Shown: positions 13,484 to 40,428 of the stretch, piece after piece
How positions within the stretch are numbered: position 1 is the first letter of the stretch
Layout: each line of letters starts with the position of its first letter
Source: Asterias rubens
Taxonomy: Eukaryota
Assembly (NCBI RefSeq): GCF_902459465.1
Contig: NW_022985714.1
Span: 1-64,000, forward strand
DNA: 64,000 nucleotides
Direction: 5' to 3'
The notes under the pieces: model-generated
Databases searched by the model: none
The model's input: only the letters and a program-made list of their open reading frames with translations
Told to the model about the DNA's origin: nothing
Translations under genes and position numbers: made by a program

Positions 13484-16400
13484 CTACTGTCCAGCACTGG
13501 TGGCTATCGTGATCTGCGCGTTATAATCCGTCGTCTCCATCCGTAAGATATACGGAATGATGCTATCAATCTGGACGTTGCCGATGAGACCAGCGAAGAA
13601 CAGCTCCTCCATGATTCCTGGGTTGAGGAGACGCAATGCTGGCAGACGCAGGAGGAGCTTCCCAAAGCGGTCTGGGTCATTGGGGTACGTCTTGGTCTCA
13701 TACGCCCTCAACTCACTCACCGCTTTTTCCTGGAATTTCTCAATTTGCCGAGGGTTGGTGAGCCCAGGGTGATCTGGAAATATATTTGAGTACATGAAGT
13801 TAAGGCAGAGTCAAGTAGAATGGGAAAAAAGCACTCCAAGTAGAGAACTGGAGTTGAATAAGGGAGTAAGAATAGACGACCAGGTTTAAACAGCCGTTTT
13901 AAACCAGCAGGTTCATGGCCGTGCAATACATGATCCTGCAAGGTTTTAAAGGGCCATTAAAGACAAAGCCACCACTTATAAGTTCCCATTCATAAATAAC
14001 TTTCCTTTAAACACATCAAAAATACCTTTGAGATGTTGAGAATAAATCTGACAGTTAAGCCTCAGCTCGCCTCGACTCTTTATTGAAATGCTATCCATGT
14101 TGAGCACAAAGTAGCTCTTAGTGCAAGTTCAGTGCTGGCATGCTCAAGTCTCAAACTATCGGCGATCGCATACAAGTTTGGTAAGTATAAGTTGCCCACT
14201 TCTTTCAATTCCCGTTTCCTCAGGCCATGCTTATAAACACTCCACACTATGTTTATATCGCGATATGAATATATATTTTCATAAATACAATATGCAATAT
14301 TGACTTCCGACAACTGCCAACATTTGCACACAAAGAAAACGTTTGCACAAAAGAAAAACATCTCCCTGGGTATACTCGTCTACAGTGCTGTAATTTTCGA
14401 CATGAAACCTGTTCTAAACTGCTTGAACAAACCACACAAATAACCTCACTATAAGTAAGGGAAATCTTTTGAAGAATTTCTTTTCACCTGGACTGAAGAG
14501 GACTGCAGCCTTGAGGTAAGCAAACTCCGACGAGTCCATCTGTAGCTTGGTCGTTACCGAGACAAACTCTTGCAGCTTCCAAATGTGTTCCATGACAGCC
14601 TTGACCCTGTCTGCTGAGAGCTTGTCTGTGACAAGGAATAAAGCACATTAGAGGTTACAAGACCTGAGGCACAAGCCGCAACCCTTGAACGTTCGTCTTA
14701 ACAGAGTTTACAGTGACCCTCAATAGAAAAAGTAAAGGTTGGGTCATAGATTGGTAAGAACTCCAACAATTAATTACTATAAAAACTTGAATGGGATTTG
14801 AGGCATTGCATGGGGAGGCATCAATGTATATTTGGTTTGCAGACGCCATGTGCGTACCTACTTGATGGGAAGATTATGTTCTTTTGAGAACGTGTCTTTT
14901 CAAAAATTCAGGTGACTTCTCAACTATCGCGGAGTAGATTTGGGGTATTCAGGAGGCTTCTCAGTTCTGCAAAGAACTGTCCTGCTTTTTAGCTACTACC
15001 TGAGCAGAAGGTAGAAAATCGGTCGGGACTACTACTTCCGCTTAGTGGATCGGGGGGGGGGGGGGGGGGGACTTCTGGTAATGAACTTCACTACTGCAGT
15101 GAGTTCTTGCTCAAGTCATCATCATAAGACTGTGAGATATTATGAGCATTATATAAAAACTTACTTGATGAGATCCAATGCAGCTGTTGATAATATAAAC
15201 TGTTTTTAATTTTGAGACTGGAGAATCCCTTCGAAGTAATATAATTTGAAAATGTTTTAACCCCCACACACAGTTGAACCTGAGAACGGATTAATGCACA
15301 GATCTTTCCTCAGATTTTGGAAGTTTGGAGTTCGTTCGCGAATGCTGCAGCCAGAGATGCATGCCATTGGTACCCACTGTCACCTCACTGAACGCAGGAT
15401 GGATTAAATATTGATGAGAAAATATCACAATTTTTGGGGCTGTTTTCTCAGCAAGTAGACACTGTAGTCAGCTAAAGCTATTGACACTTTGACGTTAGTA
15501 AGCATTAAGTTGACAAAAACCAATCTATGACCCAACCATTAAAGAGATCCTGTGTGCCTTAATAATGATTTAGTATATCATTTCATGGCTGGCAGTAGTC
15601 ATCAGCACTTCCTGCTTTGGCTTGAAGGAAAACTCAAGCCAAATTTTGAAACTGGAAGTTCCCTTTACTCCCATTGAACCCTCTTTGCTAACTAACACAC
15701 CCCAACTGTTGAATATAACAGGAACACCCATACTTATACCCAATGATTAGTGTAATTTTAACCTCACTCTCAAGACTTTCAAGATGGATTAGCTTAAATA
15801 TATTTCTTATTAGTCTTACTGTAACCTTCACAGGTCTAGTCTTCATTTCCACACCAAGCAACCTTGGCCCAATTTCATAGAGCTGCTTAAGCACAAAATT
15901 TTGCTTAAGCAGAAAATTCATTGCTTAGTTAAATCAGATAACCGGCCAAGACTCCACTCAATTGTTATGCTAAGTAAACAACAGCTAAATACTAGTCATA
16001 AGCAATGTATATGGCATGAAATTTTGGCCAGTAACATGTGTAAAATAAGCGAGCTATTTTCGTGCTTAAGATTTTTTTTTGCTTAAGCAGCTCTATGAAA
16101 TTGGCCCCTGGGCCCAATTTCACAAAGTCTCTAAGCACAAAAACTTGCTAAGCACAGAAAACTCTTGCTTAGCAAAAATAGATTACCAACCAAAACACTA
16201 TACATTTATCATTGGTGTGATTAGTACCCCACTCATTTCTAGCTTAGCAAAGGAGTTTACCAAGCAGAATTTTCTGCTAAACAGCTTTATGAAATTGGGC
16301 CCGGTTCTTTGTGACAAGTTCACAGTGAATTCTGAGATGGGCTTGAAAGTTTTGGGGAGTAAAATTGTCTCCAAAATAGCTTATCACAAAAGTGTGTGTG

Positions 16401-19400
16401 CCCCCCCCCCCCCACCACAAACAAAATGAAATAATTTTAGCACAAACCACCTCTTAGATGAATGTAAATACAGGCCTTTCAAATTAAGGGTGCCTTTAAA
16501 GCAAGTTAATGAGATTGAAAGGTTAAGAATTTAATGTATATGACACGACAGTCAACAGGCCTGATACTTTACGGAGGCAGCGAAGGCGATTGCCTCCATG
16601 CCCCTTGGTGCCCTTTTGCCTTGGTGCACTTGGTATGCTCCAGTAGAAATTTACAATTTCCTCACAGGGTGCCCTTATGAGGAGAAAATGGAGAAAATGC
16701 CTTGGTGCCCCTTCCGTTTAAAAAAACAAGGCATATAGGCTTGCAGTCATGCCCCAACAAAATGGGGTGGTACCAAAAACTCCTTTGGAATCTGGATAAG
16801 TTTGAGATAAACAAACTTCTAGTCCGGTAAAATTCAGACTAAACGCTGTGTATTCTAATGGTATTTCCCCCAACCCATCAGTAACTCCAGCCTTGTGTAG
16901 GGTGTAGGTATAATTTTAACAAGTCTACGCATGATTCTAAACCTATAAGAAATGGGTGAGTTAAGTGGGAGGGGGTTGGGGTTTGGCAATGGGGACCAGT
17001 TAGTTTCAGGACAAACTCAGTCAAAGATTGAGCTGGATTAGCTTCTGCAGTGATGTTGTGAGCATGCTGGAAATAGTATCAGAGATCAAGATTATTTTGG
17101 AAAAATCTGTGATGAAAAAAAAACATCATCGGAACAAACCGAGATTGTAGCATGCTTGGTATATAATGTCAATATATTGTCTCTGCGTATTACAGTAGTA
17201 GGTATCGTCGTAAAACTTGTCAATTGCATGCAGTCCTTGAAGCGTATACAAAATGTTGTCTAGGCTGGTGTACTAGCTGAAACCTAAAACCATACTGAGT
17301 AGGATTGGTGGGTTGGTTACCAGACCCCTCTGGATCTCTCCATCCATCCACCTTTTTGAATGAAAACCTTTGATTGTACTTTTAATACTGACACAATTCC
17401 TACACAAATTGATAAGACTTTCATTACTATTCTCTCCTAACAATTTTGAATGCAGAGTCCGTTTAACAGTTAATGTTTCTGAATCTATGAAAATCCAAAT
17501 AATTTCAGCATGGCTCGCATGTATTCGAGCCAGTCAAATTCAAGTAAAATTTGCTTTTGGAATTTGCTAGGGCAGAGTATCACTGTATGCCCTAGGACTC
17601 AAACCAAAATTGATGCTATCAATCATACCACTCTCTTCTCTTGTGCTGATTTTTAAAGAAACTATTTTTTTGCTGCAATTTTTTTTTATTTAGATTTAAT
17701 ACCAGTTTTTGATTGAGGTTTTCAGGTAATACACATGGCCTTCAGGCTCGATGAATGTGGCTACGAAATTAGTACAGACTAAATGCTTCCAGGTAGCTAC
17801 TTCCCAAACTAGCATCTGGAAAATGAGCATGCATATATTCATGAGGCGAGGGGAAAAAAAGCATGCACGTCAGTTTGGACTGAGCCATTTGAAAAAATGA
17901 AAATTTGGTTTTCTTTGGGATGTCCAGGGTTTAGGGACATTCCTCCTCATCATCACCCTGCAGAAGCTACCTTGCTCAAGGGGCACAGCACACAAATTGG
18001 CTGCGGTACCTTGCTGCAGACTCGTCTGAAGGTGGTTGACGATCGCCGTCAGGATCGTTGAGAGCGCCATCGTCTGCGAGCACTGGGCCAGGCCGAGGGT
18101 GAACAGCTCACTCCAGCACTTCTGGACCATCGTTACGTTGGATTCCGGACTGCAGAAGAGGCATACACACACAGGTGTTTGGTTATATGGCTAAACTAGC
18201 TAACAAATTATTTTAAAAATTGTTTATTAAAAAGTCTGGTACAATGACTTGCTTACTCACAAGTTACCGCCTAAATATGAATTTAAAAAAAAATTAATGG
18301 CTTGACGTTTTGACCCAAGCAGAGTCGTTCCCGAAGGCTAAATGACAACACCACAAACATGAACGGAGAAGTAAGTGAAACATAAGCAGTGAAGTGGAAA
18401 TACACTAATAGAAAGAGAGAGAGTTAGTCAGAGAGCACACAGAAAAAAGCAAGGGGTAAACAAAGAATTGTAAATCTGAATTCCTCAGACTTTAGAGATG
18501 AAACATGGCTCAGGGCAAGCTTCCTTATAGCAACCTCCAGATGAGCAAACCTTGGTACCATTTGAGCCATACAAATTCATTCAAACTTATATGTTGACCA
18601 TCTCTTCCGTCACTCTGCAAAAACTTGCCCCTAATCGTGTGACGTAGCATCTGTCTCATTAGGCAGAGGAATACAAATTGAAACGGTCAATTGTGAGTAT
18701 TAAGCAAGTCATTTTGGTTTACGATATTTACCCTAATAGCTGAAATGCATGGATATTTCTAGCCCAGTGCATGGACAGGAAAAGCAGCCTTGAGGCCGAT
18801 TCACAGATGTAGTGCACGTTGAGGAACTGAGGCATGGGGGACGGTGTGGTCAACTTGAACTGCATATGGGATTCATTTAACATGTTCCCATCAATCTTGA
18901 GGAATTGTTGTTCTCCAGTGCCGCCTTGGTTGTTACCGCCATTGGCCTGGTCCGACAAACTGCACATGCGGAAGTAAATGAGTCGAGATTTAATTTAAGG
19001 ATGAAACGCTTGCCTCGACCCTAAATCTCTTCACAAATTTAAACAAATATTTCAAGGTGTTGGGCGAAACTTGTTTGCTTTAATTACCTTAATAAAAAGG
19101 AAACTTGCTGTTGAATCAAGAAAAAATGTGACCCGCTCTAACGAAATGAGGAATGTCTAGTGAATTTCACATTTGCATATTTCATAATATTCCAAACAAG
19201 CAAATCTTAATATTTTAAATGAAATAAAAATCAAGATCATACGACCTTCCTGTCTGAAATAATGTGGATTTTTCGACGCCCTTGACGCTTAATTTTACGA
19301 CCCGTTTTGGAAAACACAAACTCCATAAAAATTAATTTGAAAAAAACGCGACGTCTCACACACTCATTAAAATAATATTAATATTTTTGTTTACGATAAT

Positions 19401-22400
19401 GAAAACATCAATTTTTAACCCCCCGTAGTCAGGCAAACAAAATTACCAAAATGAATAAACAACTCAACGAGAAGTTAGATTATAATGTGTAGACAATTTC
19501 ACCAATAAGTTTGACAATGTTTACCTGAAATTTTAGAGCAATTTGCGTTGATATTTCCAACTTGAAATGCGAGTTTTGTTCCGTCAAGTCAAAACATAGT
19601 AAAGACAGCTGTCACTCAGCGCATAGCATCAACCCCCATGGGTATACTCGGCTTGAAGACCAGGGAACATTCGCAATTTCCCCGTGCATGTTTCTCATGA
19701 TTTTAGCGAAATTTCTTACCCAGCATGAAGTTTAACTGAAAGATTATTCCTTTAACATTCAGAATTATTTTGGTTTGGAACAATTCAACCTTGAAAAACC
19801 ACGAAACAATGATGGAAATTAGACACTGTTTTCCCAACGTTCGATAAACATTCCACTGTTCCATAAGTCGTACGTGTAGCAAAGTTTGTGCATGGTACCC
19901 GCGCAGTGTTCGTGTGTACATTGTCGTATTACCAGCGCTGCAACTAGCTATGGCAACAAGACCGGGTCGGGTGATCGGACTCTCACGCTGCATGGATAAA
20001 CAACGCCTCGGTCTGTGAGCCATACTAAATCTTGCGACGCAGATTTATGAATGAGAGATGTCATCGCTGATAAAACAGGGTTTGCCTTTGGTGACCTTTG
20101 AACCCCCTTTCAGTGTTGACACATGTTTTTGGTGGCTATATTTAGACACCTCTAATCTTTGGCTTTCCAATGGTACTCTTGGTGGCGCTATGCAAGTTGT
20201 GTGAAAAGTTTTGCGACGCTCGCCAAATTTGGTGTTTTCAATGAATGTTCGCTGTCTGTCCCGTGGGATTTGGAACATTTTTGGATAATTACGTCAAGAA
20301 CATGGCTCAGAAATCGTCTGTTTTTACATCTTTAGTAATCTTTTGACGAAAAGGTAAGACCATAGTAAGTTTAATCAAGATTTAGGCAACCTAAAAGTGT
20401 AGTAATAAAAAAATTAAAAAATTCAATAATTTTCATTAATTGTTTGTTATTATTATGTTCGGTGTCAAATTACACGAAATGAAACTTTACTAGACATTCC
20501 TCATTCCGTCAGAGCGGGTCACAAATGGTCTAAAGCGGACTTGAACCTGCAATGTTCATATTACATATTAAAGGAACACGTTGCCTTGAATCGGGCGAGT
20601 TGGCCTATGAAAAGCATTTGAAAACCGTTTGTTATAAATGCATATGGTTAGAAAGATATCTTAAAAGTAAAATATATTATACACACAAATATGCCTCGAC
20701 AGTGCGTGGTTTTCCATATATGTCGTGAACTAACACGGCATGCCATTTTGTGGAGTCAAGTTTTTGATTCCATAAAATGGCTGACAGTGTTAGTTTGCAA
20801 AGTAAATTAAAAACCACGCACTTTCGAGGCATGTTTGTTTGGATCATTATATTCAACGTTTAAAACATCTTGCTAACCAATGCATTTCATAACAAATGGT
20901 TTCAAATGCTTTTCCAAGACCAACTTGATTGCCCCAAGGCAACACGTGCCTTTAACAGACAGGACCTCTACAAACTGAGCTATCTAGCCATAATGTCTGC
21001 AGTCTAATCATTTTGTCAATATCTTTGTGAAGTGGTGCCAAAAAGTCATGGAATTGTGCACACTTTTTGACAAAACATTATGTTTGCTTGTTACAAAAAG
21101 ACTTAATCCTTAAAATTAGGTTAGTATCTCAATAGACCTTTTCCTTGTAATATACACCAAGTTGAATCTGTCCAGGGCTAGTCAATAACTTTTAACAGGC
21201 ATTTACCAGATTTGTTATTAAACTTCATGCGCACTTCTCTTGCTGTGCGCCAAGTGCATGTTTCATAAACACTGCACCATGGCATATTAAACATGGTACA
21301 TATACTATGAAAGGATCTGTTTGTCAGGCCGTATCTGTTTACATCAAAGGATCTTTTTTCCATACCAGAATGTATTCCCTGGTTTTGAATGAACGACAGT
21401 GTCCGAAAAGGTAGTTACAACTACGGATCTGGCTAGATCGCAGCCTCATAATGAGTTTAAAGGAACACGTTGCCTTGGATATTTTAAAAGTAGAATATAA
21501 TGATCCACACAAGTATTACTCAAAATTGCACTGTTTTCCTTTTATGTCGCGAACTAACATGGTCGGATATTTTATGGAGTCATCACGACGTTAAAGGAAA
21601 ACCGTGCAATTTCGAGGCATATTTGTGTGGATCATTATATTCTACTTTTAAATTATCTATCCAACCATTCGTATTTCATAACAAACGGTTTCGAAAGCTT
21701 TTCAAAGACCAACTCGACCAATCCAAGGCAACGTGTTCCTTTAACTACAGAACCTCCTGAGCAACACCCACAGCAACAGCCACAGCCATATCAATCATTT
21801 CAAATACAGCCGTAGAGGATGTGAATCTTTGAATACTCTTTTGTTACCTGATTTCAAGAGCAGAGCTACCATCGCCCCCTTCCACTCCTGGCGCTAGAGC
21901 TTTGGCAAGAGTATCAAAGGCTTTCGAGATCTGGTTCGGAGTCTGATTGACGCCCGACTGCACTGATGTTTCTCCATTCGGTACCATCTACAAAACACAA
22001 GTAAAGGAGTTCCAAATAAGCATAATAGACTTACAGGCAGGGTGTATAAGAACAACAGTAACCTCACTTGGTGTTTCCCAACATTTGCAATAAAATATAA
22101 AAAAACTGTGCAATTTTCCATCGAAGTTGATTGAATATAAAGAAAGAAAAAACACTCTTTTTGCAAAAAATTGTGTGCTTTCAGATGCCCGAGACCTGAA
22201 CGCTTTCTCAGATTCAAATGATTGGGTGAAAAATTGCCCCTTTCTCTAAAACTACATTTTCAAAGGGGGGTTGTATCTAACATAACAATGTTTTGTGACA
22301 TCAACAGCGCTCCTGTGCTCTTTACCAAGTAAGTTTCTATGGCCTTTAAATTTTGAAGTAACTACCCAAAATAAACAATGCCTTTTAAAATATCAAATAT

Positions 22401-25400
22401 TTGAGTAGTAGAAAGTAAGGGAAATAGATAGGGAGGTCAAATCATGATTTACATACCGTCTGTGCATCGCCTGCTTGTCCCGCTTCACCGGCTTTATTCA
22501 TATTAGCCAGTGACGTGACCACGCTGGCCAAGGTACTAAGGTCTGTGGTGGTGTCTGTGGAGGCTTGAGATACCACAGCAGGGTTCTGTACATTCAGAAG
22601 GAGACCCTCCTCAAACAGTTTGGTCTTCTGCATTGGGTAGGTTGGACTTCTGTCTTGAGCTGGGCCAAACAAATCAATAAAGATATGAACATGAACGACT
22701 GAAAATAAACTCAACCTTATTCCTGACTATAGACCTTATGCATTGATTTCATCCAGCCGCCATCTTAGAGGTAAAACGTTGACGCCACAAATAAAAACAC
22801 ACAGATATGTACGCGCGACGCATGGGTTTGGCCAATAAACGGCCGCTTTTTTGAACTACAGGTGAGGGGGCCCTACTGAGATGACATCATGTGCATAAGG
22901 TCTACTGGAATCATTACGTACATTATTACAGCCATTAGTGGGAACTATTAGACCAGAAAACATTTAAAAAGTGTTTATGACAAAATAAGACATACTAAAC
23001 CATTTTGTTCCTCAACTATTTATCACTACTTTGATTTCTCATAAAGTAAAATCTGAATAACTGGCTTTAGTAGTGGCTATGGTCACAATGCTGAAAGACT
23101 TAGGATACCACCTGGAAAGCGGCCATACCAAGGATCACCTTAAGGGGGATGCAACCTTTTGTTCTAAATATCAAGAATAAACCCAATCTATGCTTATCAT
23201 TCCCTACATGACTGAAAAAAGACCATTTGAAAATTCATATGGACAGGTCTGAAAACTGTCCAGTATTCTCATCAATAATAGATAAACTAATAAAGACAAT
23301 TCAACATGAATTAGAATCAAAGTTCACCAATAAACAACCAGAAACAAAACAAAAGCAGTAATCAATGTTAAAGCACCCTGTGGATAGTTGCTGGTTAAGA
23401 GAAAATGTTTTTAGACAAGCAATAAAACCATATCAGATTTAAAGACCAGCTTGAACGGAAAGGGCAACAAGTAATCTTCGATGTAACTCATTTCCAATAC
23501 TGTGTAATCAATTAAGGAAATAGAGTTCACATCAAAGTAAACAGGTTTTTCAGTTGTAGAAAACCCAATTCTTTTCTGGAGCTTTTCAGAATTTTTTTGA
23601 GAAAAGCCCTGTGAAATCTTCCCCCATCTTAAATCATTTGTTGGAGCTCCATTTTGTATAGCCGCTTTTTTGCAATCACAAAATGACATCCCACATGCGC
23701 GAGTATACTCCAGAGGAGGTTACTGCACAAAGTAGCAAGAAGGCATAGGAAGGTAATGACGCCAAAGTATTGTAATTTTGATGCAAAACCTTGAGGCCTA
23801 TTTGATTATTACAAAAATGCAAAAGTGTAATAATATCACAACAGTTAAATGATTATTTAACACATAAACAAGTTTAACTAGCATTCCAGTTATTAAAACT
23901 GCTCGCTCAAGTAGCTATTTATAAAATGCAAGAACAATTGATTATTGTTATCTAACGGTATTCCAATGAAATCTGTAAATTTGAGTTAGTAAAAAAAGAG
24001 CAAACATATTTTAACAACATATATTGGGAGTTGACTGAGAACGTGTTAGTTGAGAAAGAGAACAGCACAGCAAAGATAATTTTAATCAAGCCTTGTTTTA
24101 ATTGACATGACAACGGGAAAATGTATTAAAATTGTTGCAATGAAAAGAAAATGTAATTTAATTATTTTGGGGTTGGCGTAAAGGAAAAACTTACAACAAC
24201 AAAAAGAATTCCGGTTAAAAACAGAGTAATCACATCCCCCATACACACAGGTATAGCATTAACCAGAAAGCAGGATGATTTAAGCAGATAAACCCATACC
24301 AAGCCATGTTGAGGTATTGCGGACACAATACTAAGGCACTTTAGGTTTGGGTAAATCTAATCATAACTCCACCCAAACCAAACAGTGCAAACCAATAGTG
24401 TTCATAATTTTTCAAAAAGGCTAAAGGATGAGTCACACTCTAGCAATAACGAAATCGATCACGACGCAAAGAGAACGCATCCTATTGGTTGAATGGGCGT
24501 GTGCGTATTCTGCGTGAAGCAATTCAACAAATAAAATGCGTTCTCTTTGCGTTGTGATCGTTATCGTTTTCGTTATCGCTGCAGTGTGACTCGGCCTTAA
24601 TTCCTTTCCATCGAGATAAGTCATCCTACATTCCTACCTGTAATGAACGTCGGTGTCGCTGTCAGAGGACTCCTGATGTCCTTGCGGATGTAGATCTTCT
24701 CCGTCGAGGCGGCACAGTTGCCGGGCGACTTCTCTCCGCGAGCTTTGAGAGGTGTACGTTCACACTGCACTACTGGGGGAAGGAAGTGTCCCAAGAAAGT
24801 GACCAATTTTCAGACTTGGTTTGCACGACTGATGAAACTGACCAAGGGATACATTACATTGCATCAGGGACCAAAATCATAGAGCTGCAAAGGTGCTAAG
24901 CACAGTACTATTCTGCATAGCAGAAACCAGCCGGTGTTCCAACTAATATATGATGTTTGTAAACTTTTCAGCTCAGCAAAATTAACACTTCTACTAAGCA
25001 GCTCTTTTTCATATTGGTCCCTGACCCAAAGTGTTTAATAAATTCATACCAATTTTCTGTAATTTATAAAATTACTAATTGCACTGGGTTTTTTGTGTGT
25101 TTTTTTTTCAATTATAATGTGTGTCGATGGTTGCAATAAATGGAACCCTGAATGGTTCTAAATTCTCAAGAAAAGAATAGTAAAAATAAATAAATAAATA
25201 AAGCTAATCAAGTGACAGACATTCCACCCTTGATTATACTACTCACATTCCGATTTCATTCCAACGAGCAGGCATTTCTGAAGCCGGCAAAACTGGCACC
25301 GGTTGCGATGGTGTTTGTTGATTGGGCAGTCCTTGTTGCCGCGGCAACTGTAGCCCAAGCTTTTCCTGATGCTGCGCTTGAAGAAACCCTTACAGCCCTC

Positions 25401-28400
25401 ACAGCTGATGGCCCCATAATGCCGACCTTGATGGAGACATAACAAATTGATTAAAATCAATTCTCAATAAGTAGGATTTGAAATCTATGATGGTAACACA
25501 ATCTAGTGAGAACCAGGTGCCAATTTCACAGAGAGCTACGATTGATCTTAACTGCAATTCAATCGTAGTTGCTAAGTAAAGTGTGATGTCACAATACAAA
25601 TCACTTTAGTAATGCTGACATTTGATTTAACGATGGGTTTGACTGCTTTGTGAAATCTAGCACTGGGGCCAATTTCACAAAGAGCTAAGATAGATCGTTA
25701 CTGCAAATCAATCATAGTTCTAAGTAAAGTGTGATATCACAATGCAAATCACCATGGTAATACTGACAATTTTGTCTTGCGATGAATTTTATTGCTTTGT
25801 GAAATTGGCCCCAATTTCATTGGGTGCTTAACCACAAAAAGTAGTTAAGCATAACAAAATTATGCTTACCAGAATAAGGTTACCAGTCAAACTGCCATGC
25901 TACTCATTTCTAATTAGCAGACAATTGTGAAGCAATATATTTTGCTTAAGCAGCTCTATTGTCCCAATTTCATGGAACTGCTTCAGCACAAAAGCTAGCA
26001 AAGGTTACCAGCCAAAATACAATGTCACATGTACAATATATGACTGGTATCCTGCATACTTCTGCTTAATAGAAATTTGTTTAGCATACTTTTCTGCTTA
26101 AGCAGCTCTGTGAAATTTGGTCCAGGGCAGTTTTATGCCACCACAGAAATCTGCACTGACAAGGACCTGTAAAGACAAGGATCCTCAGGCTGAAAGTGCA
26201 GAATTCCGCAGTAAGCAGTGCTATGAAATTGGGCATAATACAATATGATTTTTAAAGGCAGTGGACACTATTGGTAATTACTCACTAAATGGCATAAAAC
26301 CTTACTTTGTAACGCTTAATGGGGAGCTGTTGATAGTAAAAAAACATTGTGAGAAACGGCTTCCTCTGAAGTAATGTAGTTTTCGAGAAAGAAGTAATTT
26401 TCAATGAATTTGATTTTGAGACCTCAGATTTAGAATTTGAGGTCTCGAAATCAAGCAACTGAAAGCACACAACTTCGTGTTACAAGGGTGTTTTTTTTTA
26501 ATTATCTCGCAACTTCGACGATCGTTTGAGCTCAAATTTTCACAGGTTTATTATTTTGTGCATATGTTGAGATGCACCAAGTGAGAAGACTGATCTTTGA
26601 CTGTGTGTGAAAAACAGGCACTAGCTGCAGAAAAGGCTGCCCTTATATGAGCATATTTCACAGATTAGCAAGGCTTTTTTAGCGCACATGCCTACACCAT
26701 GTTATTAAGAGCTCTTTTGTTTTACACGGCCAGCACAGATATTCAGCCCTTACTTGTCACACAAGCAACTTTTAGAGGCAACCAAGTGCAGTGCATCCTA
26801 CAGGGCTACTTCAGTAGCACTCAAGTAACTTTTCTAAAAATATCTTACAATCCCGAAGAACGACTTAGTGACCGTTTAAATGTGAGACTGCCTGGAACTG
26901 GTTGCCTGTAAATTGTCTCGGGTGACATGGGCCTCACCCTGTAAGTGGAGAATGGTGACCCTAAGTGCAGACTTCTGTCATTAGCCTTTTTGAGGTATGG
27001 TAGACACTATAGGAGTGCACTGTGTTGGTTTGGGTTAATTCAGTCAAATTAACAATGATGACAGTGATAATAATATTAGGCATTTATAGAGCACTCTTAC
27101 ACAGGGTACCACAGTGCTTTTCAAGACTCTAAACAATGAGCAACTAAATAAACCCAAACTTAATAGTGTCATAGGCTTGTATCCACCATATATCAAAATG
27201 GCTCATTAGCACAGCCATGACATTGGGCCCTGATTGAACTCACCTGATGCATTGTCTCCACATACCATACATGGTTCAATGGGGCGCTGTGCTGGCTTTC
27301 GATCCACACCCATGGTCTTCATTGCCATCTCATCAATAGTAGCCTGATGGTCAACGCGGACCAACTGCTCCACTGTGTGCTGGTTAATTTGAACCTGCTG
27401 CACCTACAAGACAAACAGCTCATTTCATTAACCCCTCCTTTAACAACTCGCTATCGGCCTTGGAATTTCATTATTGAGAAGGCAAGGCCATTTTTTTTTT
27501 GCAAAGGGCAATCAGGGGGACATTGTTTTTTAAATGTCTATATACCAATTCAGGCGAGCACTGGGCGCGCAAGTGTTGAGCACCGCGGCCATTGCTGAGG
27601 TAACATGTGCCTAGTTTTGTGCACAGAGACATGAGGAAATCACGTTCTTTTCACCCTTTATGGAAATTAAATGTTTTCCTCAACGACTATCACAATTTCC
27701 TTGCCAATATCCAATCACAACAGCATTATAAGGTGGGGATGTGTATTTCTGTATTATACCTTATATGTGTCAATGTGAACCTGTTGACCGGGTACTTGGT
27801 TGATAGGCTGACCAGAACTCACCATGTGACCTGGCATTTTGACCACTTGATGGACGGTACCAGGCGGCATCTGCTGCACGATGTGTTGAACAAATTGTTG
27901 CGACACCTTGGGAAATAACACACATTGAAGATTACATTGTGTATTCAGTAGACTCAGAATCAGAATAAGCCAAGCGTACACAGCTTTTCTTTTATAAATA
28001 TCTATCCGCAACAGACGACCGCTATTCCAATACACTCACAACTTACGTAACCAAACATAGCTCTAGCAGCAGAGTCATTGAGCTACATGTATCAACGAAC
28101 ATAACACGGGTGGGTTATAATGGGGTACACAGTGCTTGAGGGTAGCTCCCAAAATGTTCCAATACTTGAACCAGGCCTGTATGCTTCGTTTTTGAAAGAG
28201 CAAGGGCATCAAGGCATTTCCTCCATTGGCACCCTATGAGGAAATTGAAAATTTCTACTGAAGCATTTCAAGGGCATCAAGGCAATGACAAGGAAGAATG
28301 GCATGGAAGAAATCGCCTTCATTGCCTCCGTGAAGTATCAGGCCTACTTGAACACTCTTTTCCTCTTGCAAGCATTCAAGCATAGTTTATGAAACACAGT

Positions 28401-31400
28401 ACATTACTCTGCCCCCCCCCCTTAAAAAAAAAACAGGAAAAAATACGCTGCTCTTTAAAATGCAGCGTCACAATTCTGTTTTACAGACAGTGTGTAACAA
28501 CTCAGACATTTTACAAAATGTCTTTACCATGTTTGTTTTTGAAGTGATAACTCTGAAGTTGGAGAGTTGCAGGAATTATGCACATTTCTAAAAAGCTTAA
28601 AATTACAATTATCAGGAAGTAAGTGCCTTGCTGAACAATCCAAAGCATCAAAGCATATCGCTGCTTTACAATGTGTCACATTCGGCATGATAAACAAACA
28701 ATTACCTGCTGAACGTCCTGAACTTCATGTATTTGATTAGGCTGGGAGACCTGTCCAAATAATCAAAACACAAACACTTTAGCGGACGTATCATTCTGTT
28801 AAATATATTGGATGAAAGGTCAAACTGTACAGGGATGTGATAGGCTGTTGAAAAAAACCTGAACTTTGAGCCAAAAGCATGTGAGTGAAAAGCGTGAAAG
28901 CTTGGGAGTGTAAATGCGAAGCCTGCTTACATACATTTATATTTGGCTTTGAAAGCGCTGCTCTGCAATCTGGGGTATTCTATATGGGTTTATCTTCATT
29001 TTTTTATAAATTTGTTTTTAATTTTTTTTTATGGGCGTGACACACGACCTTGCACCTGTTCTTATAAGACAGTTTCTTCATTCCTATTGGTCGAGAGCAG
29101 CTGCTGAAACAGTTGTGCCACATCACGCAATACGCGCGACGCGCACAGCATTCCCTTAAAGGAGTTGTTTACCCGAGGGCGGCGAAGGGCTTTACCATTT
29201 CATAGCTGGAGGAGTGTTGTGTTGAAAGAAATCATTTAACAATTATAGTTTTTGCATTTATTTTACTTTTTGAACAAAAAATGATGATGTTTTTGACCGA
29301 AAAGGTATTTATGAATGGGAATCAAAGTGTGTTGAATCGGTTTTCAACTAGTGATTTAAAGGAACACGTTGCCTTGGATCGGACGAGTTGATCTATAAAA
29401 AAAGAGTTTGTAACCGTTTGTTATAAAATGCATATGGTTGGAAAGATGTTTTAAAAGTAGAATACAATGATCCACACAAGTTTGCCTCGAAATTGCGTGG
29501 TTTTCCTTTTACTGTGCGAACTAACACGGTCGGCCATTTATGGGAGTAAAAAATTTGACTCCCATAAATGGCCGACTGTGTTAGTCGACGAGGTAAAAGG
29601 AAAACCGTGCAATTTCGAGGCATGTTTGTGTGGATCATTGTATTCTACTTTTACAGCATATTTCTACCCATATGCATTTTATAACAAACGCTTCTCAAAG
29701 ACCAACTCGACCGATCCAAGGCAACGTGTTCCTTTAAACCTGCCGAGGCCTGGTTCTTTATAATTTATCAAGAACCAGGCCTCGTTGGGATTAAACCACT
29801 AGTTGAAAACCTCTTCAACACACATTGATTCCCTTAGTAAAGATGGCCTTTTTACCAATTCCAATCTATGTATGAAACGTCACTAAACAATTGTGAGCTT
29901 GATCTCCATTTTATAGCCATACATTAAAATTAGTAAAAATGAACATCTTTGCTGAAGCAATACAATACTGTCTAAACCAATATTGAATGTTAGTCCTACC
30001 TGTTCATTTGTTATTTGCTCAATAACATGATGCACCTCTTGCCCGCTGCTCTGTGGGACCTGCACAGGGAATGAAACAAATTGTCATAGGGCCTAATTTC
30101 ATAGTGCTGCTAAATGGTAAGCAAATTTTTGTGCTTACTGTAGCAGAACAATTTGCTAAGGTGCAAGCATATTTCGCAGGTTAGCAGAAAAACTGGGCGG
30201 ACATATTGTGCGTTTACCATGGATTTGCACTGTGACAGCTTTTATTTTCGTGCGGTAAGCACCAGAAGGTTAGCATGCCTTTTCGTGTGCTTACAGTTAG
30301 CAGCGCTATGAACATGAAATGGAAATCGCAGTTAGCACAAAATCAGCCGCTAAGCAGCTCTATGAAATTGGGCCCTGGTCGGCTACAGAGACCCTAATTA
30401 AGTTCCTATATTACTTCAATGACACCAAATGTAACCAGTCACAACTGTTAAACCAAGTTCACTTGATATGAAGATAATGTGAACGTAGAGTGTAGGGTAG
30501 CTATTTGCCAGTATGCAATAAACTCAGGAAGTCATCGTTAGAATTGCAGTCACCTGCTTCAGACCTCATTCAAAGGGAACTTCAATCAGAGCACACGCCA
30601 AATTACATACAACTGCTTCATCAAAAATAGTAAGCACAATAAAATTATGCTTACCAGAATAAGGTTACCAGGCCAGTATGCTCCGTTTCTGAAAGGGCAA
30701 GGGCTACAAGGCATTTTCTCGGTAAGGGGCACCCTATGAGGAAATTTCAAACTTATACTTGAGAATTTTAAGGGCACCAAGGCAATGACCAGGGCATGGA
30801 GGCAACTGCCTTTGATGCCTCTGTAAAGTGTCAAGCCTGGGTGACTGGCCAAGTACCATGTTAAACAAACCATCTGTGAGTGGTATTCTGCTAAGCAGAA
30901 AGTTGGTGCGATATTTTTAACTTGAGGCAAAAGTTGTGCCCTAATTTCAAGGGGATCATTTTCAAGTGGCACCAAGGCAACACTAGGGCAACAAACAGAC
31001 ACCATGGCCTCGCCATCCACTCACTCACCTGTTCCATATACATCACCTCCTGTAGTTGATTCTCTTGGGGGATCTTGAATAGGAAACACACACAGACAAT
31101 TACACAATACACATTATTAATATGGTCTTTCTTCACATAAAGATTCTCCAATAAGCCATTTGCGTGTTAGATTTGAAAAATATCTGGTACAATAACTTGC
31201 TTGGTCACAAGTTACCACTTAAGCTTGAATTCATCAGGTAGTCAAGACAGTTGCTTTGTCACATGATTAGGGCAAGCTTTTGCATAGTTACGTGAGAGAT
31301 GGTGAACTCCCATACATATTTTGAATGGATGTGTATGGCACAATGGAACCAGGGTCTGCTCATCTGTAGGTTGCTGTGTGTGGGTAACAACATTCTTTAC

Positions 31401-33177
31401 CATTGCCTAGGTGCCACTTGAAATGATCCCACTTCATGATCACACTGAAATGATCCCACTTAAGGTTTAGCAAGTACTTTTTGGAACAGTAAAGGATGTA
31501 TTTGTTGGGTTATGTTGGTTACAGTATTTATGATAATGGGTCACCCCTTTTTTCCGATGGCTGTTCGAACACACAGAATGACGTTTTTTTTTAAAGACCT
31601 TTTTGTTTTGGCAAATTGTTCTCAAAGCATGACTTTGATTGGCTAGACAACCTGCTTAAGAGTTTAACATTCATCACGATCGACAAAAATCTGTTAATGT
31701 AAATTTTAACATTACAACTTTAGCCTAAAACACCACAATGCAAAAACTTCATTACAGTGGCATAGACCAGGTGCCCCCTTTCACAACCCTTGCCCTCCAC
31801 TTGCCCCCACAAATGAGATTGATAAATCACAATAAATGGATCCATACAATTTATAGCCCCCTAAATTATGCCTTTGCCCGATCAAGTGAAAATGTTTGGT
31901 GACACAACTAATTCTTAACAGCTGTAAAAAAAACTTTAAAAAACGAACATTTAAACACTTTTCACACAACACAAATTCCCAGGTGAACGAAACCTAGGAA
32001 ATTTTGGGTGAATTTCAACCCTATAGCCACCCTATGTCTGTGTCACACCTGATCCAGTTTTTTTCCCTGAAACAAATGCACACTCAAGATGCTAGCCCCG
32101 GGTTACCTCGCTTAACCCCCACTCATCAGCAAGGGTAGCTACCTTCTGAGAAAAGTTTTTCCTGCAAGTCTGTTGTGAGAGGGTTAGCAGTTCAAGTGTG
32201 AAAAGATCAAATAAATGTTTCTAGGAAACTGTGTTGTTTGAAAGGGGCCGTTTGGGGTGACTATAGGCCACAACTACATTGTGTATAAGTGGCCCTTGGC
32301 CATGGGTAAGAGGTTGAAGAATACGCCTTTGTAGTGATGTACAGTAGCTGCAGCACAAGATGGTCTGCATTTTTGGGTACAAGGTTGAAGAGATCTCTGT
32401 AGTGTTCTAGCCAATCACATAGCTGCAGCGAAAGCAGCTAAATCCTGTGTTAGCTACGCAAATTTGGTGGTATCAATGAGAAACATTTGTCAATATTACA
32501 AAAACATTGATAGCAAAGTTCGTTGACTGAACAAACAAAAAGCAGGCTATGAATTGTGCCATGCAAAAGCAAAATTAATAAAATTTTTTCAGACAAGGAA
32601 ACAAATACAAACACAACAAAAAACACAAAACAAAAACAATGCAGTAGTACTAAAGGACATATATCTGAGTGTGCTTTGTGCCTCTCTCCAGTAGTGGTGG
32701 TGAGAATAGTCAAAAGGATAGTACAACATTACTTAAGGGCTTTCTGGTGGGGTTTTCACACTGGTCATATTACATGAGACATTTTACATTACAAGTCTTA
32801 CTTTCCAAATAAATTCAAGAGTTACAGCTGAACTCATTTTAAGATTTGCCTCCTTTCTTTAAATCAAAAGTTGATAAAATACAGGCAATGAAATCTCTCT
32901 TAAATATAACATTTAATGTTTTCCCTACAGTGCTTGCAGGAAGTCCAGGCTATGTGTTCGTTTGCAAATGCAGTGTTACAGGTTAAATGGTCTATACTGA
33001 ATGCTAACTTTATAGTTGATGTTGTACTATCCCTTTAGAATTGTGAAAACAAAAGTGATGTGTGCTTTCAATTTCAGGGTTTACCTCCTCTGCCACCTCT
33101 TCCTGTATTATTTGGTGTTCCACAACCTCCATCACAGGTTCTTCTTCAACCTCTTGACTAACCTGCATGCTGTCCAT
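13484..33177 (-). CDS. NR2C2: Orphan nuclear receptor TR2/TR4 (single NR2C1/NR2C2 pro-ortholog, SpSHR2-like), 14 coding exons, about 667 aa
   Basis: Exons 5'->3': 33177-33085, 31073-31029, 30059-30000, 28750-28706, 27906-27760, 27403-27244, 25426-25247, 24772-24638, 22659-22457, 21987-21848, 18959-18732, 18149-18010, 14625-14488, 13773-13484; GT-AG, phases consistent. [34 protein letters not shown]...[11 protein letters not shown]2C signatures [59 protein letters not shown] and [24 protein letters not shown]. Confidence 0.95.
15866..16301. mobile_element. Two tandem Harbinger-like MITEs sharing a CTG site
   Basis: GGCCCAATTTCA...TGAAATTGG(G)CC termini; junction GGCCC-CTG-GGCCC at 16103-16115. 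Confidence 0.7.
16556..16743. mobile_element. Dispersed MITE family (CAGGCCTG ends; GGTGCCCTT-rich)
   Basis: Inverted copy at 28172-28345; partial copies near 8490, 30690-30840 and 42660-42790. Confidence 0.6.
18232..18345 (-). mobile_element. Penelope-like element terminal remnant with a degenerate hammerhead-like motif
   Basis: Minus strand reads CCTTCGGGAAC-GACTCTGCTTGGGTC-AAAA-CGTC; shares its upstream part with 31183-31230. Confidence 0.45.
19127..20523. mobile_element. 1.4-kb non-autonomous TIR element (TGT...ACA ends)
   Basis: TGTGACCCGCTCTAACGAAATGAGGAATGTCTAGT / ACTAGACATTCCTCATTCCGTCAGAGCGGGTCACA; no transposase motif in the internal ORFs. Confidence 0.7.
20568..20955. mobile_element. 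TTAA-flanked MITE family A (Kolobok/piggyBac-type target)
   Basis: TTAA-AGGAACACGTTGCC...GGCAAC(A)CGTGCCT-TTAA; other copies at 21457-21744 (internally deleted) and 29356-29737. Confidence 0.8.
21457..21744. mobile_element. TTAA-flanked MITE family A, deletion derivative
   Basis: Same TIRs as 20568-20955, opposite orientation of the internal sequence. Confidence 0.8.
24430..24592. mobile_element. MITE-like long fold-back
   Basis: Arms GAGTCACACT..AATAACGAAA..CGATCACGACGCAAAGAGAACGCAT / ATGCGTTCTCTTTGCGTTGTGATCG..TTTCGTTAT..AGTGTGACTC. Confidence 0.7.
25515..26235. mobile_element. Stack of about 5 Harbinger-like MITEs
   Basis: Successive CCAATTTCA...TGAAAT(T/C) units at about 25515, 25666, 25811, 25962 and 26126. 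Confidence 0.6.
26252..26600. mobile_element. TTAA-flanked MITE family B (truncated)
   Basis: TTAAAGGCAGTGGACACTATTGGTAATT end; full copies at 58750-59122 and 63181-63859. Confidence 0.75.
29317..29833. mobile_element. Fold-back element with MITE family A nested at its TTAA (29356-29737)
   Basis: Outer arms GGGAATCAAAGTGTGTTGAATCGGTTTTCAACTAGTG / CACTAGTTGAAAACCTCTTCAACACACATTGATTCCC; inner hairpin CGAGGCCTGGTTCTT / AAGAACCAGGCCTCG. Confidence 0.7.
30088..30373. mobile_element. Harbinger-like MITE
   Basis: GGCCTAATTTCATAG...CTATGAAATTGGGCC followed by CTG. Confidence 0.65.
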
Positions 33178-33339
33178 GGTGAAACCCTAGTTGTCTTCAC
33201 CTCATGCGATGAACAGATTGCAAAATAGAACCAAACCCTGCTGGGGATGAGGGAAAACCGAGACATAAGGATTAGTGAGAAACTTACCTATTGTTTAAAG
33301 CTTTGCATGGTGTGGATAAATAGGAAGAAACTTTAAATA

Positions 33340-33562
33340 AATAAATAGTAAACTTGTGGGTACAACCATGTGTACATCTCTTTTTTTGTGGGAGTGTTAG
33401 ATCTGACGTTTCGAACAGTATACTCTGCTAGTCTTCACGAATACTGAAGACGAACAGAGTATAGTACTGTTCAAAACTCTGAGACCACACCGGTTCTTTT
33501 CAGAGCCACACTCCCCCCAAAAGAGATGCACATGGCTGTACGAGCAAGTTTACTATTATTTA
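33340..33562. mobile_element. Palindromic Penelope-like remnant containing two degenerate type I hammerhead motifs
   Basis: Arms of about 60 bp (AATAGTAAACTTG..TACA.CCATGTG.ACATCTCTTTT..GGGAGTGT and its complement); minus-strand motif at 33403-33438, plus-strand motif at 33444-33482. Confidence 0.6.
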
Positions 33563-36500: not shown

Positions 36501-36983
36501 TTGTTCTAGTCTTAAAAATTGTGGTCAAAGAATAGTATGACACAATGGGCTTTACAGTGAGTATTCTGAAAAAGCAGCAGCAACGATTTTCTGATAGAAA
36601 GTTTCTAATGTGTGATCCTGACTTAAGCGTAGTATCTGAGCATCCACACAAAAGGGTTTGTTGGTCTTAACGAATAGTAAAAGTGATATTTATTTCCTTA
36701 TCAAAATCTTTTCTTGAACATCTTTTGTCCAGTCGCCAGCTTCAACAGAGATGTTTGTATCCAGTAGGACTTTTTGTGATGTCAAATTTACTCTTAGTGT
36801 TTGCAGTCAACCCTCCAACTGTTGTTCCCATTTTCCAGTGAGTTAACCAACCATTTTGGAACCGATCAAATGCGTGGCTGCTGCACAGGCTGTGTTTTGT
36901 GTTAATAGTCAAGTTGGTGCCGACTTGCATAACACTGTATGTTTTAATCATCAAATAATTCCAAACCAAGGTGGAGGATATCA

Positions 36984-37635
36984 ATGGATGGGCCTACTAC
37001 TAGTAGTACTAGGAGGAGTTTACTCACTTCAATGGATAGTACTAGGAGGAGTTTACTCACTTCAATGGATAGTACTAAGAGGAGTTTACTCACTTCAATG
37101 GATAGTACTAGGAGGAGTTTACTCACTTCAATGGATAGTACTAGGAGGAGTTTACTCACTTCAATGGATAATAATGCATGGATGGGCCTACTACTAGTAG
37201 TACTAGGAGGAGTTTACTCACTTCAATGGATAATAATGCATGGATGGGCCTACTACTAGTAGTACTAGGAGGAGTTTACTCACTTCAATGGATAATAATG
37301 CATGGATAGGCCTACTACTAGTAGTACTAGGAGGAGTTTACTCACTTCAATGGATAGTACTAGGAGGAGTTTACTCACTTCAATGGATAGTACTAGGAGG
37401 AGTTTACTCACTTCAATGGATAATAATGCATGGATAGGCCTACTACTAGTAGTAGTACTAGGAGGAGTTTACTCACTTCAATGGATAATAATGCATGGAT
37501 AGGCCTACTACTAGTAGTAGTACTAGGAGGAGTTTACTCACTTCAATGGATAGTACTAGGAGGAGTTTACTCACTTCAATGGATAATAATGCATGGATAG
37601 GCCTACTACTAGGAGGTGTTTGCTCACTTCAATAG
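36984..37635. repeat. Composite minisatellite: about 13 copies of a 33-bp unit interleaved with 29-32-bp identical spacers
   Basis: Unit AGTACTAGGAGGAGTTTACTCACTTCAATGGAT; spacer AATAATGCATGGAT(G/A)GGCCTACTACTAGT; pattern A5-B-A-B-A-B-A3-B-A-B-A2-B-A'. Confidence 0.95.
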
Positions 37636-40274: not shown

Positions 40275-40400
40275 CTTTTTAGGGTAAAAATGGAGGAAAA
40301 CAACGGCAGAAATGTGAATTAAAAGGTCAGAGTTCGTGACCTTCTCTGGAACCTGAATTTTCTGCAGCGGGATAAAAATTTAGCTGCGCATCAAAAATTT
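40275..40400 (-). other. Non-coding first exon of NR2C (upper boundary approximate)
   Basis: Consensus donor AAAAAG|GTGAGTAG at 40275/40274; no ATG in the exon; lies just downstream of two CCAAT boxes; matching acceptor at 33240/33237. Confidence 0.65.
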
Positions 40401-40428
40401 GCATGGCGAAGCCAACTCCTGCATTGTG

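What the first reader, a model, noticed from the sequence alone, without database searches (positions are those of the whole stretch)
27760..33177. NR2C N-terminus is a cassette of homologous phase-0 Q/E/V-rich micro-exons
Seen: five consecutive symmetric exons of 93, 45, 60, 45 and 147 nt encode [31 protein letters not shown] / [15 protein letters not shown] / [20 protein letters not shown] / [15 protein letters not shown] / [12 protein letters not shown]..., followed by [13 protein letters not shown]. The three shortest start V/I-P/S-Q and end in Gln (CAG). An in-frame alternative donor at 27781 removes VHIDTYK. The 28706-28750 exon is invisible to the ORF track. Inference: serial exon duplication has built a combinatorially tunable low-complexity AF-1/condensate domain unlike the vertebrate TR2/TR4 N-terminus as I recall it.
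Basis: partly seen in the sequence, partly recalled or inferred. Interest (0 to 1): 0.7.

Follow-up and report, generated by a model that had tools for sequence, protein, structure and literature searches.

The report
Starfish NR2C receptor's small N-terminal exons
This stretch holds the first five coding exons of the common starfish gene for a TR2/TR4-type nuclear receptor. The exons are real and already annotated, and gene models drop two of the tiny ones in some isoforms, so this is a tidy but ordinary case of a receptor varying its N-terminal tail by splicing.

Summary
The window is Asterias rubens. [quoted passage not shown] All five RefSeq isoforms map base for base. The N-terminal A/B domain is encoded by six exons of 93, 45, 60, 45, 147 and 160 nt. 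They have AG/GT sites and are separated by phase-0 introns.

Alternative use is annotated already:
- Exon 2 is skipped in isoform X4.
- Exon 5 has an inner donor (ATG|GTGAGT, minus 21 aa) in isoform X5.
- Acanthaster models skip exons 2 and 4 singly and together. Lytechinus models skip its 2nd and 4th exons in all four combinations.

The three small exons were 45/45/45 nt in ancestral asteroids. Asterias exon 3 gained 15 nt when its old donor was lost. The three share residue order beyond composition (permutation p about 0.0007) and are under strong purifying selection (dN/dS 0.03-0.10). No intronic trace of duplication remains. A crinoid and a hemichordate encode the region without these introns, so intron gain is a live rival to exon duplication.

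Vertebrate NR2C2 also builds its A/B domain from phase-0 exons. The condensate/AF-1 function is untested.

The parts
33085..33177 (-). Coding exon 1 (93 nt; ATG at 33177-33175). Encodes the acidic/hydrophobic peptide [31 protein letters not shown]. Donor is GAG|gtaaac.
   Evidence: Exact spliced mapping of RefSeq isoforms X1-X5. Same 93-nt exon in Patiria and Acanthaster.
31029..31073 (-). Exon 2, a 45-nt phase-0 cassette exon ([15 protein letters not shown]). Weak acceptor ...caAG|, donor CAG|gtgagt.
   Evidence: Present in X1-X3 and X5. Skipped in X4 of A. rubens and A. amurensis and in X7/X8 of Acanthaster. About 20 nt of the upstream intron and the gtgagtgag donor region are conserved in three asteroid genera.
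30000..30059 (-). Exon 3, 60 nt ([20 protein letters not shown]). The ancestral 45-nt core is 30015-30059. The 15-nt extension 30000-30014 (ITNEQ) was gained when the old donor CAG|GTA became CAA|ATA.
   Evidence: Patiria and Acanthaster have a 45-nt exon ending GAACAG|gta. See the three-species comparison of the exon end. No model skips this exon.
28706..28750 (-). Exon 4, 45 nt, phase 0 ([15 protein letters not shown]). Included in every Asterias model. A cassette exon in Acanthaster models.
   Evidence: Closest in sequence to exon 2: 27/45 nt identical without gaps, codon-permutation p = 0.0014.
27760..27906 (-). Exon 5, 147 nt. Holds the conserved core ...[15 protein letters not shown]... 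and ends ...IDTYK. An inner alternative donor ATG|GTGAGT gives a short form, 27823-27906 (minus 63 nt, 21 aa).
   Evidence: Isoform X5 of both Asterias species maps with the exon ending at 27823. The core aligns with LPSG..QHV..SP of the sea urchin, sea cucumber and hemichordate.
27775..27786 (-). Not supported.
   Evidence: Matches the donor consensus only at GT. Absent from all ten Asterias gene models.
27244..27403 (-). Exon 6, 160 nt. Holds the conserved [17 protein letters not shown] motif (predicted beta-hairpin), a linker, and the first zinc-finger cysteines (CMVCGDNAS). It ends in phase 1.
   Evidence: The AlphaFold2 model has strands at 127-136 and 139-147 with pLDDT 62-83.
13487..25426 (-). 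Coding exons 7-14: the rest of the DNA-binding domain, the hinge and the ligand-binding domain.
   Evidence: Exact mapping. Pfam zf-C4 E = 2.2e-31 and Hormone_recep E = 3.3e-39.
30660..30845 (.). Dispersed repeat of about 175 bp in intron 2. A second copy lies at 28170-28345 in intron 4. This is the only similarity between the introns and is not a duplication scar.
   Evidence: The two copies are 77% identical, whereas copies elsewhere in the genome are 82-85% identical to the intron-2 copy. At least 1210 first-look candidates genome-wide.

Best explanation
The stretch is the 5' coding part of the Asterias rubens SHR2 gene, the single echinoderm orthologue of vertebrate NR2C1/NR2C2 (TR2/TR4).

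Shown:
- The A/B domain is split into six exons separated by phase-0 introns, so dropping any of the internal exons E2-E5 leaves the reading frame intact.
- Gene models use this. Exon 2 is a cassette exon and exon 5 has a strong inner donor. In Acanthaster exons 2 and 4 are both cassettes. In Lytechinus the 2nd and 4th exons are cassettes in all four combinations.
- The same layout (first exon, three small exons, the 'LPSG' exon, the 'VQQVQI'+DBD exon) is shared by sea stars and sea urchins.
- In asteroids the three small exons were each 45 nt. They carry a common pattern, [VI]-[PS]-[QH]-x-[NS]-x(1,2)-[QH]-E-V-x-x-[VM]-x-Q.

Inferred:
- The layout therefore predates the split of sea stars and sea urchins.
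- The three small exons most likely arose by old tandem duplication of one 45-nt exon, or of a repeat unit later cut by introns.
- They encode short acidic/hydrophobic, Gln-rich peptide modules in a disordered tail. Residue-level selection keeps them intact, which suits cofactor-binding or activation motifs.
- Splicing sets how many modules the receptor carries, tuning N-terminal (AF-1-type) activity without touching DNA binding or the ligand-binding domain.
For: - Identity: all five RefSeq isoforms map exactly on the window. Pfam finds zf-C4 and Hormone_recep. The best non-echinoderm, non-hemichordate relatives are vertebrate NR2C1/NR2C2 and amphioxus NR2C2.
- Isoforms: E2 skip and the E5 inner donor in two Asterias species. 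E2 and E4 skips singly and together in Acanthaster. Two cassette exons in Lytechinus pictus, one also in L. variegatus. N-terminal cassettes in Apostichopus and Amphiura too.
- Exon maps: Acanthaster 93/45/45/45/147/160, Patiria 93/45/45/45/144/160, Lytechinus 90/75/48/54/174/244, Apostichopus 126/63/57/57/54/102/217, with phase-0 introns between them.
- Asterias E3 extension by donor loss.
- Similarity beyond composition, with end residues held fixed: combined z = 4.4, p = 0.0007; E2-E4 p = 0.0013. At the DNA level E2-E4 gives p = 0.0014-0.014 in three genera.
- Constraint: pS 0.5-0.8 against pN 0.07-0.10, dN/dS 0.03-0.10, close to the DBD exon at 0.02-0.04.
- Disorder: pLDDT below 50 for residues 1-123.
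- No further hidden Q/E/V-rich mini-exons up to 41 kb.
Against: - No RNA reads could be laid. Exon skipping rests on RefSeq models. These were made separately for each species, but I did not see their read support.
- E3-E4 similarity alone is not significant (p = 0.06). In a 66-pair cross-class screen the best pair (Asterias E2-E4, p = 0.002) would not survive correction.
- Introns carry no duplication scar.
- The crinoid Antedon and the hemichordate Ptychodera encode the region in one exon. Antedon exon 1 aligns collinearly with Asterias E1+E2+E3 (E = 0.069). Both points fit intron gain or loss as well as duplication.
- The V...Q exon ends can be a by-product of the CAG|GT splice consensus in a Gln/Val-rich frame.
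- Activation-domain function is inferred from composition only.
- The structure model rests on 12 sequences.
Confidence: 0.8

Rival explanations
1. Intron gain, not exon duplication. The ancestral A/B domain was one continuous, internally repetitive Gln/Val/Glu-rich exon, as in crinoids and hemichordates. Introns later entered at in-frame CAG|GT (Gln-Val) proto-splice sites in the lineage leading to sea stars, sea urchins and sea cucumbers, cutting it into small phase-0 exons. Any similarity among the pieces comes from the older peptide repeat.
For: - Antedon has 3 exons and Ptychodera 2 for the A/B domain, against 6-7 in eleutherozoans.
- Antedon exon 1 aligns collinearly with Asterias E1+E2+E3.
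- Most junctions in this region, in every class examined, read Q|V or Q|I (codon CAG followed by G or A); the rest are E|V, E|I, A|V and K|V.
- Small-exon sizes differ between classes (45/45/45, 75/48/54, 63/57/57/54). Cross-class exon-to-exon similarity is not significant.
- No intronic duplication scar.
Against: - Three exons of exactly 45 nt in asteroids is what unit duplication predicts. Random intron insertion would need luck to produce it.
- Gar NR2C2 also has phase-0 introns in this domain. The first follows ...EQVAE, like ...EEVAEE in Asterias. Some of these introns may therefore be ancestral and lost in the crinoid and hemichordate.
- Large-scale intron gain is rare in deuterostomes (general knowledge).
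Confidence: 0.35
2. No common origin at all. The likeness of E2, E3 and E4 is convergence: splice-site consensus fixes the ends, and selection for similar short acidic/Gln-rich motifs fixes the middle. The exons are unrelated pieces of a biased-composition domain.
For: - E3-E4 p = 0.06 and E2-E3 p = 0.017 only.
- The units are short (15 aa) and were picked because they look alike.
- Composition is extreme: Q+E+V make up 58% of E1-E4.
- QEV/HEV-type triplets recur throughout echinoderm A/B domains.
Against: - The combined permutation test with end residues fixed gives p = 0.0007.
- E2-E4 similarity is also seen at the nucleotide level in three genera.
- The three exons have equal length and phase.
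Confidence: 0.2
3. The exons are all constitutive in vivo. The skipped forms are rare splicing noise or artefacts promoted to models by the annotation pipeline, with no regulatory meaning.
For: I obtained no read-level evidence. Patiria has no N-terminal variant among its three models. E4 skipping is not modelled in Asterias.
Against: - The same E2 skip is modelled independently in A. rubens, A. amurensis and Acanthaster.
- Every eleutherozoan class examined has at least one small phase-0 N-terminal cassette.
- E2 keeps a non-consensus AAG acceptor and conserved flanks in three genera, as regulated cassette exons often do.
Confidence: 0.12

Closest known systems
Sea urchin SpSHR2 / echinoderm 'orphan steroid hormone receptor 2' (the NR2C orthologue)
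   Same: Orthologous gene. Same domain order and the same six-exon phase-0 layout of the A/B domain in Lytechinus, with the 2nd and 4th exons modelled as cassettes. Shared motifs ...VEAYK|[15 protein letters not shown].
   Different: Small-exon sizes (75/48/54 against 45/60/45 nt) and sequences differ, and exon-by-exon orthology is not demonstrable. The Asterias exon 6 lacks about 30 residues of the linker present in the sea urchin and sea cucumber. From my own knowledge, unchecked here: the published SpSHR2 splice variants concern the C-terminal part, not the N-terminus.
Vertebrate TR2/TR4 (NR2C1/NR2C2) A/B domain and its N-terminal isoforms
   Same: In gar NR2C2 the A/B domain is likewise built from exons separated by phase-0 introns (60, 111, 201, 103 nt) with ...E|V and ...Q|I junctions. 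N-terminal isoforms exist: shark NR2C1 models with or without a 45-aa exon, and two human TR4 isoforms (PMC9943680). The NTD is flexible (PMC9943680).
   Different: Vertebrate exons are larger and carry RIQIV(T/S)D repeats rather than QEV units. BLASTP finds no significant N-terminal similarity to the starfish (E = 1.4). There is no trio of equal 45-nt exons.
Tandemly duplicated exons used as alternative modules (general class)
   Same: Adjacent exons of equal length and phase with related sequence, some optional.
   Different: Here the copies are used additively (cassette inclusion or skipping), not in the mutually exclusive way typical of many duplicated-exon pairs. The duplication itself is old and only statistically inferred.
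A/B-domain isoform diversity of nuclear receptors in general (for example RAR, ROR, HNF4, PPAR-gamma N-terminal variants; general knowledge)
   Same: The variable N-terminal activation region is altered while the DBD and LBD stay constant.
   Different: Those cases mostly use alternative promoters and first exons. This one uses internal symmetric mini-exons in combination.

Membership tests
NR2C (TR2/TR4; echinoderm SHR2) nuclear receptor | C4 double zinc-finger DNA-binding domain | tested here: met
   Pfam PF00105 zf-C4, E = 2.2e-31, residues 174-241.
NR2C (TR2/TR4; echinoderm SHR2) nuclear receptor | Nuclear-receptor ligand-binding domain | tested here: met
   Pfam PF00104, E = 3.3e-39, residues 441-647.
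NR2C (TR2/TR4; echinoderm SHR2) nuclear receptor | Closest relatives are NR2C proteins rather than other NR2 groups | tested here: met
   The top-ranked hits shown (echinoderm and hemichordate 'orphan steroid hormone receptor 2', amphioxus NR2C2, vertebrate NR2C1/NR2C2) all carry NR2C-type names in the profile search. The window encodes XP_033646799.1 exactly. I built no tree with other NR2 subfamilies.
Tandemly duplicated exons | Adjacent exons of the same length and phase | tested here: met
   45/45/45 nt, all phase 0, in Patiria and Acanthaster. Asterias has 45/60/45, and the extra 15 nt is explained by donor loss.
Tandemly duplicated exons | Sequence similarity beyond composition | tested here: inconclusive
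   Combined column-permutation p = 0.0007 and E2-E4 p = 0.0013, but E3-E4 p = 0.06. The units are only 15 aa and were chosen after inspection.
Tandemly duplicated exons | Similarity extending into flanking introns | tested here: not met
   The only intron-intron match is a dispersed repeat with at least 1210 genomic candidates. This is expected if the duplication is ancient, so it is weak evidence against.
Alternatively spliced cassette mini-exons | Symmetric short exon whose removal keeps the frame | tested here: met
   E2 and E4 are 45 nt, phase 0-0. They count as microexons only under the 51-nt-or-less definition, not the 27-30-nt-or-less one (definitions from general knowledge).
Alternatively spliced cassette mini-exons | Transcripts with and without the exon | tested here: inconclusive
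   RefSeq models lacking E2 (two Asterias species, Acanthaster) and lacking E4 (Acanthaster).
Alternatively spliced cassette mini-exons | Tissue-specific (for example neural, Srrm-dependent) inclusion | not testable with these tools
   No read data. Only E3, which no model skips, has a TGC directly before its AG.
Disordered AF-1 / condensate-forming activation domain | Intrinsic disorder | tested here: met
   AlphaFold2 pLDDT below 50 for residues 1-123, from a 12-sequence alignment. This is a prediction only.
Disordered AF-1 / condensate-forming activation domain | Transactivation and phase separation | not testable with these tools
   Needs reporter and in vitro or in vivo condensate assays. 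Strong residue-level constraint suggests specific motifs rather than bulk composition.

The most novel reading that the evidence does not exclude
Echinoderm NR2C carries an old, conserved splicing code in its N-terminal tail. The 2nd and 4th of three small phase-0 exons are optional in both sea stars and sea urchins, lineages I estimate (general knowledge) at roughly 450-500 million years apart, and the middle one is fixed. One receptor gene would then make up to four or more A/B-domain versions, with different numbers of a strongly conserved 15-residue acidic/Gln-rich module derived from an ancient 45-nt exon duplication.
Probability: 0.35. Interest if true: 0.5.

Novelty: new member of a known kind. 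Interest (0 to 1): 0.3.

Why it matters
In practice the result is a clean annotation check. Biologically it is a compact example of how the least conserved part of a nuclear receptor can be varied in modules without touching DNA or ligand binding. It may also be an example of a cassette-exon pattern (2nd and 4th small exons optional) kept in two echinoderm classes. TR2/TR4-type receptors have no agreed ligand, and their N-terminal domain is poorly understood. A set of natural variants that differ by 15-residue units, each under DBD-like purifying selection, would be a convenient handle for mapping what that domain binds. The case also bears on a general question: whether runs of phase-0 mini-exons in Gln/Val-rich regions arise by exon duplication or by intron entry at CAG|GT sites.

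Tried and rejected
There is therefore no read-level evidence. My scripts for intron comparison and the mini-exon scan left them out or masked them. The local exon-mapping scripts, and the local blastn (which used the window only as subject), read the window file as a whole.
- Run lists gave candidate RNA runs, which went unused for the same reason.
- A metagenome-contig scan for the E5/E6 junction found nothing.
- A search with the Asterias N-terminus found only the three asteroid clusters and no transcript-derived proteins.
- Sequence similarity of the starfish A/B domain to vertebrate NR2C1 is not significant. My impression of a shared 'HQII' motif is therefore only a lead.
- Exon-by-exon orthology between classes is not significant after correction.
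- Intron similarity as a duplication scar is rejected. It is a dispersed repeat.
- Extra hidden mini-exons: none.
- Amphiura exon mapping with my exact mapper failed or timed out. Only a partial tblastn map was obtained.
- Gene records for Apostichopus X2, Amphiura X3 and Branchiostoma P0001 were not on record.

Full report
[quoted passage not shown] A spliced mapper that accepts only perfect translation placed 14 coding exons on the minus strand, from 33177 down to 13487. The A. amurensis protein does not map exactly. The protein has a C4 zinc-finger DBD and a nuclear-receptor LBD. Its relatives outside echinoderms and hemichordates are amphioxus NR2C2 and vertebrate NR2C1/NR2C2. This is the echinoderm NR2C (TR2/TR4) gene, known in sea urchins as SHR2.

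| Exon | Window coordinates | Length (nt) |
|---|---|---|
| E1 | 33085-33177 | 93 |
| E2 | 31029-31073 | 45 |
| E3 | 30000-30059 | 60 |
| E4 | 28706-28750 | 45 |
| E5 | 27760-27906 | 147 |
| E6 | 27244-27403 | 160 |

- All have AG/GT sites, and introns 1-5 are all phase 0. The later introns have phases 1, 1, 1, 0, 2, 2, 1, 1.
- E2, E3 and E4 start I/V-P/S-Q and end in CAG.
- E4 is indeed missing from a 20-aa ORF list.
- The minus strand of 27404-41000 holds 368 open AG..GT phase-0 segments of 30-90 nt. The only Q/E/V/H/I-rich ones lie within the five known exons (the exons themselves or sub-segments of them), so no further unit is hidden in the introns.

**Alternative splicing: what is on record.**
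- A. rubens and A. amurensis each have a model that skips E2 (X4). Each also has a model that uses an inner donor in E5, ATG|GTGAGT after 27823, removing 21 residues (X5).
- Acanthaster planci has models lacking E2 (X7), E4 (X6) and both (X8).
- Lytechinus pictus has its 2nd (75 nt) and 4th (54 nt) N-terminal exons present or absent in all four combinations. L. variegatus shares the 54-nt cassette.
- Apostichopus has a 57-nt cassette. Amphiura has a 72-nt cassette and a 14-aa alternative extension.
- The hemichordate and amphioxus models vary only in the hinge and LBD.

**Evolution of the exon layout.**

| Species (group) | A/B-domain exon sizes (nt) |
|---|---|
| Acanthaster (sea star) | 93/45/45/45/147/160 |
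| Patiria (sea star) | 93/45/45/45/144/160 |
| Lytechinus (sea urchin) | 90/75/48/54/174/244 |
| Apostichopus (sea cucumber) | 126/63/57/57/54/102/217 |
| Antedon (crinoid) | 189/129/244 |
| Ptychodera (hemichordate) | 318/178 |
| Lepisosteus NR2C2 (gar) | 60/111/201/103 |

- All introns within the A/B domain are phase 0. Most junctions read Q|V or Q|I; the rest are E|V, E|I, A|V and K|V.
- The six-exon layout with three small middle exons is therefore shared by sea stars and sea urchins. It is not a recent Asterias feature.
- A multi-exon phase-0 A/B domain is a family trait, not something that sets echinoderms apart from vertebrates.
- The 60-nt E3 of Asterias is a 45-nt exon whose donor (GAACAG|GTAC in the other two genera) mutated to GAGCAA|ATAA. 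The next in-frame CAG|GT, 15 nt downstream, took over.

**Are the small exons homologous?**
- I used three-genus profiles, held the end residues fixed (because the splice consensus alone favours V...Q), and permuted the interior columns. The summed E2/E3/E4 alignment score lies 4.4 SD above the null (p = 0.0007).
- By pair: E2-E4 p = 0.0013, E2-E3 p = 0.017, E3-E4 p = 0.06.
- E2 and E4 share 24-27 of 45 nucleotides without gaps in each genus (p = 0.0014-0.014).
- The introns share only a dispersed repeat of about 175 bp. It has at least 1210 genomic candidates, and its other copies are closer to the intron-2 copy than the intron-4 copy is.
- Across classes, no exon pair stands out after correction.
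- Antedon's single first exon aligns collinearly with Asterias E1+E2+E3 (E = 0.069).
- My reading: a common origin of the three units is more likely than not, about 0.45 for exon duplication. Intron entry into an already repetitive Gln/Val-rich exon comes next at about 0.35, and pure convergence at about 0.2.

**What the peptides are like.**
- Q, E and V make up 58% of E1-E4.
- AlphaFold2, with a shallow 12-sequence alignment, gives pLDDT below 50 for residues 1-123. The one moderately confident element is a beta-hairpin over [17 protein letters not shown] at the start of E6.
- The domain is nevertheless not free to drift. Between asteroid orders, synonymous sites are near saturation (pS 0.5-0.8) while pN is 0.07-0.10. 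This gives dN/dS 0.03-0.10 for E2+E3+E4, against 0.02-0.04 for the DBD exon.
- That points to specific short binding or activation motifs, acidic and hydrophobic residues in a Gln-rich frame, rather than a purely compositional low-complexity region.
- E2 also keeps a non-consensus AAG acceptor and about 20 conserved intron bases upstream in all three genera.

**Comparison with what is known.**
- N-terminal isoforms are a familiar feature of nuclear receptors. Two human TR4 isoforms are on record, and the TR4 NTD is described as flexible (PMC9943680). The A/B region of TR2/TR4 is described as harbouring AF-1 (PMC12191391).
- Shark NR2C1 models differ by a 45-aa N-terminal exon.
- In the paper library I found no treatment of the echinoderm N-terminal exons. 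SpSHR2 is only mentioned in passing.
- BLASTP finds no significant similarity between the starfish and vertebrate A/B domains.

**Verdict.** The finding is real and correctly read at the level of sequence. The gene, exons and isoforms are already annotated. The duplication idea is plausible but unproven. The condensate/AF-1 idea is untested. One detail, the 27781 donor, is wrong. The most interesting residue is the possibly conserved '2nd and 4th exon optional' pattern in sea stars and sea urchins, which needs RNA data.

Noticed in passing
window 30660-30845, 28170-28345, 16556-16690 (fragments 8511-8559, 46223-46283): A SINE-like dispersed repeat of about 175 bp. It has at least 1210 first-look candidates in the genome, and typical copies are 82-85% identical.
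   Followed up: partly
window ~29360-29740 (intron 3); similar text at ~20552-20856 and ~21339-21760: A foldback, MITE-like element with long inverted arms. Mirror-image ORFs appear on both strands, and it recurs in other introns of the same gene.
   Followed up: no
window 24769-24772 (acceptor of exon 8): A NAGNAG-type tandem acceptor adds or drops one Val (X1 against X2). The same one-residue alternative is modelled in Patiria, Acanthaster and Lytechinus.
   Followed up: partly
window 17971-18009 (3' end of exon 12): An alternative donor adds 13 residues ([13 protein letters not shown]) inside the ligand-binding domain after ...LQTSLQQ. It is modelled in all three asteroid genera. Ptychodera has a 2-residue alternative at the same spot.
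   Followed up: partly
window 27352-27403 (start of exon 6): The motif [17 protein letters not shown] is almost invariant across echinoderm classes and is predicted as a beta-hairpin (pLDDT 62-83). The vertebrate motif RIQIVTD..SVERLL sits at the same place before the DBD.
   Followed up: partly
window 33160-33165: An unused donor-like site CAG|GTTAGT lies directly after codon 5 of exon 1 (MDSMQ|VSQ). It is in no gene model.
   Followed up: no
window ~4000-8450, + strand: Exons of a HemK/PrmC-type glutamine methyltransferase. ORF pieces include ...LEIGSGSGAISI... and ...SNPPYIP....
   Followed up: no
I worked beside them and sent none of their letters as a query to any search tool afterwards.
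   Followed up: no
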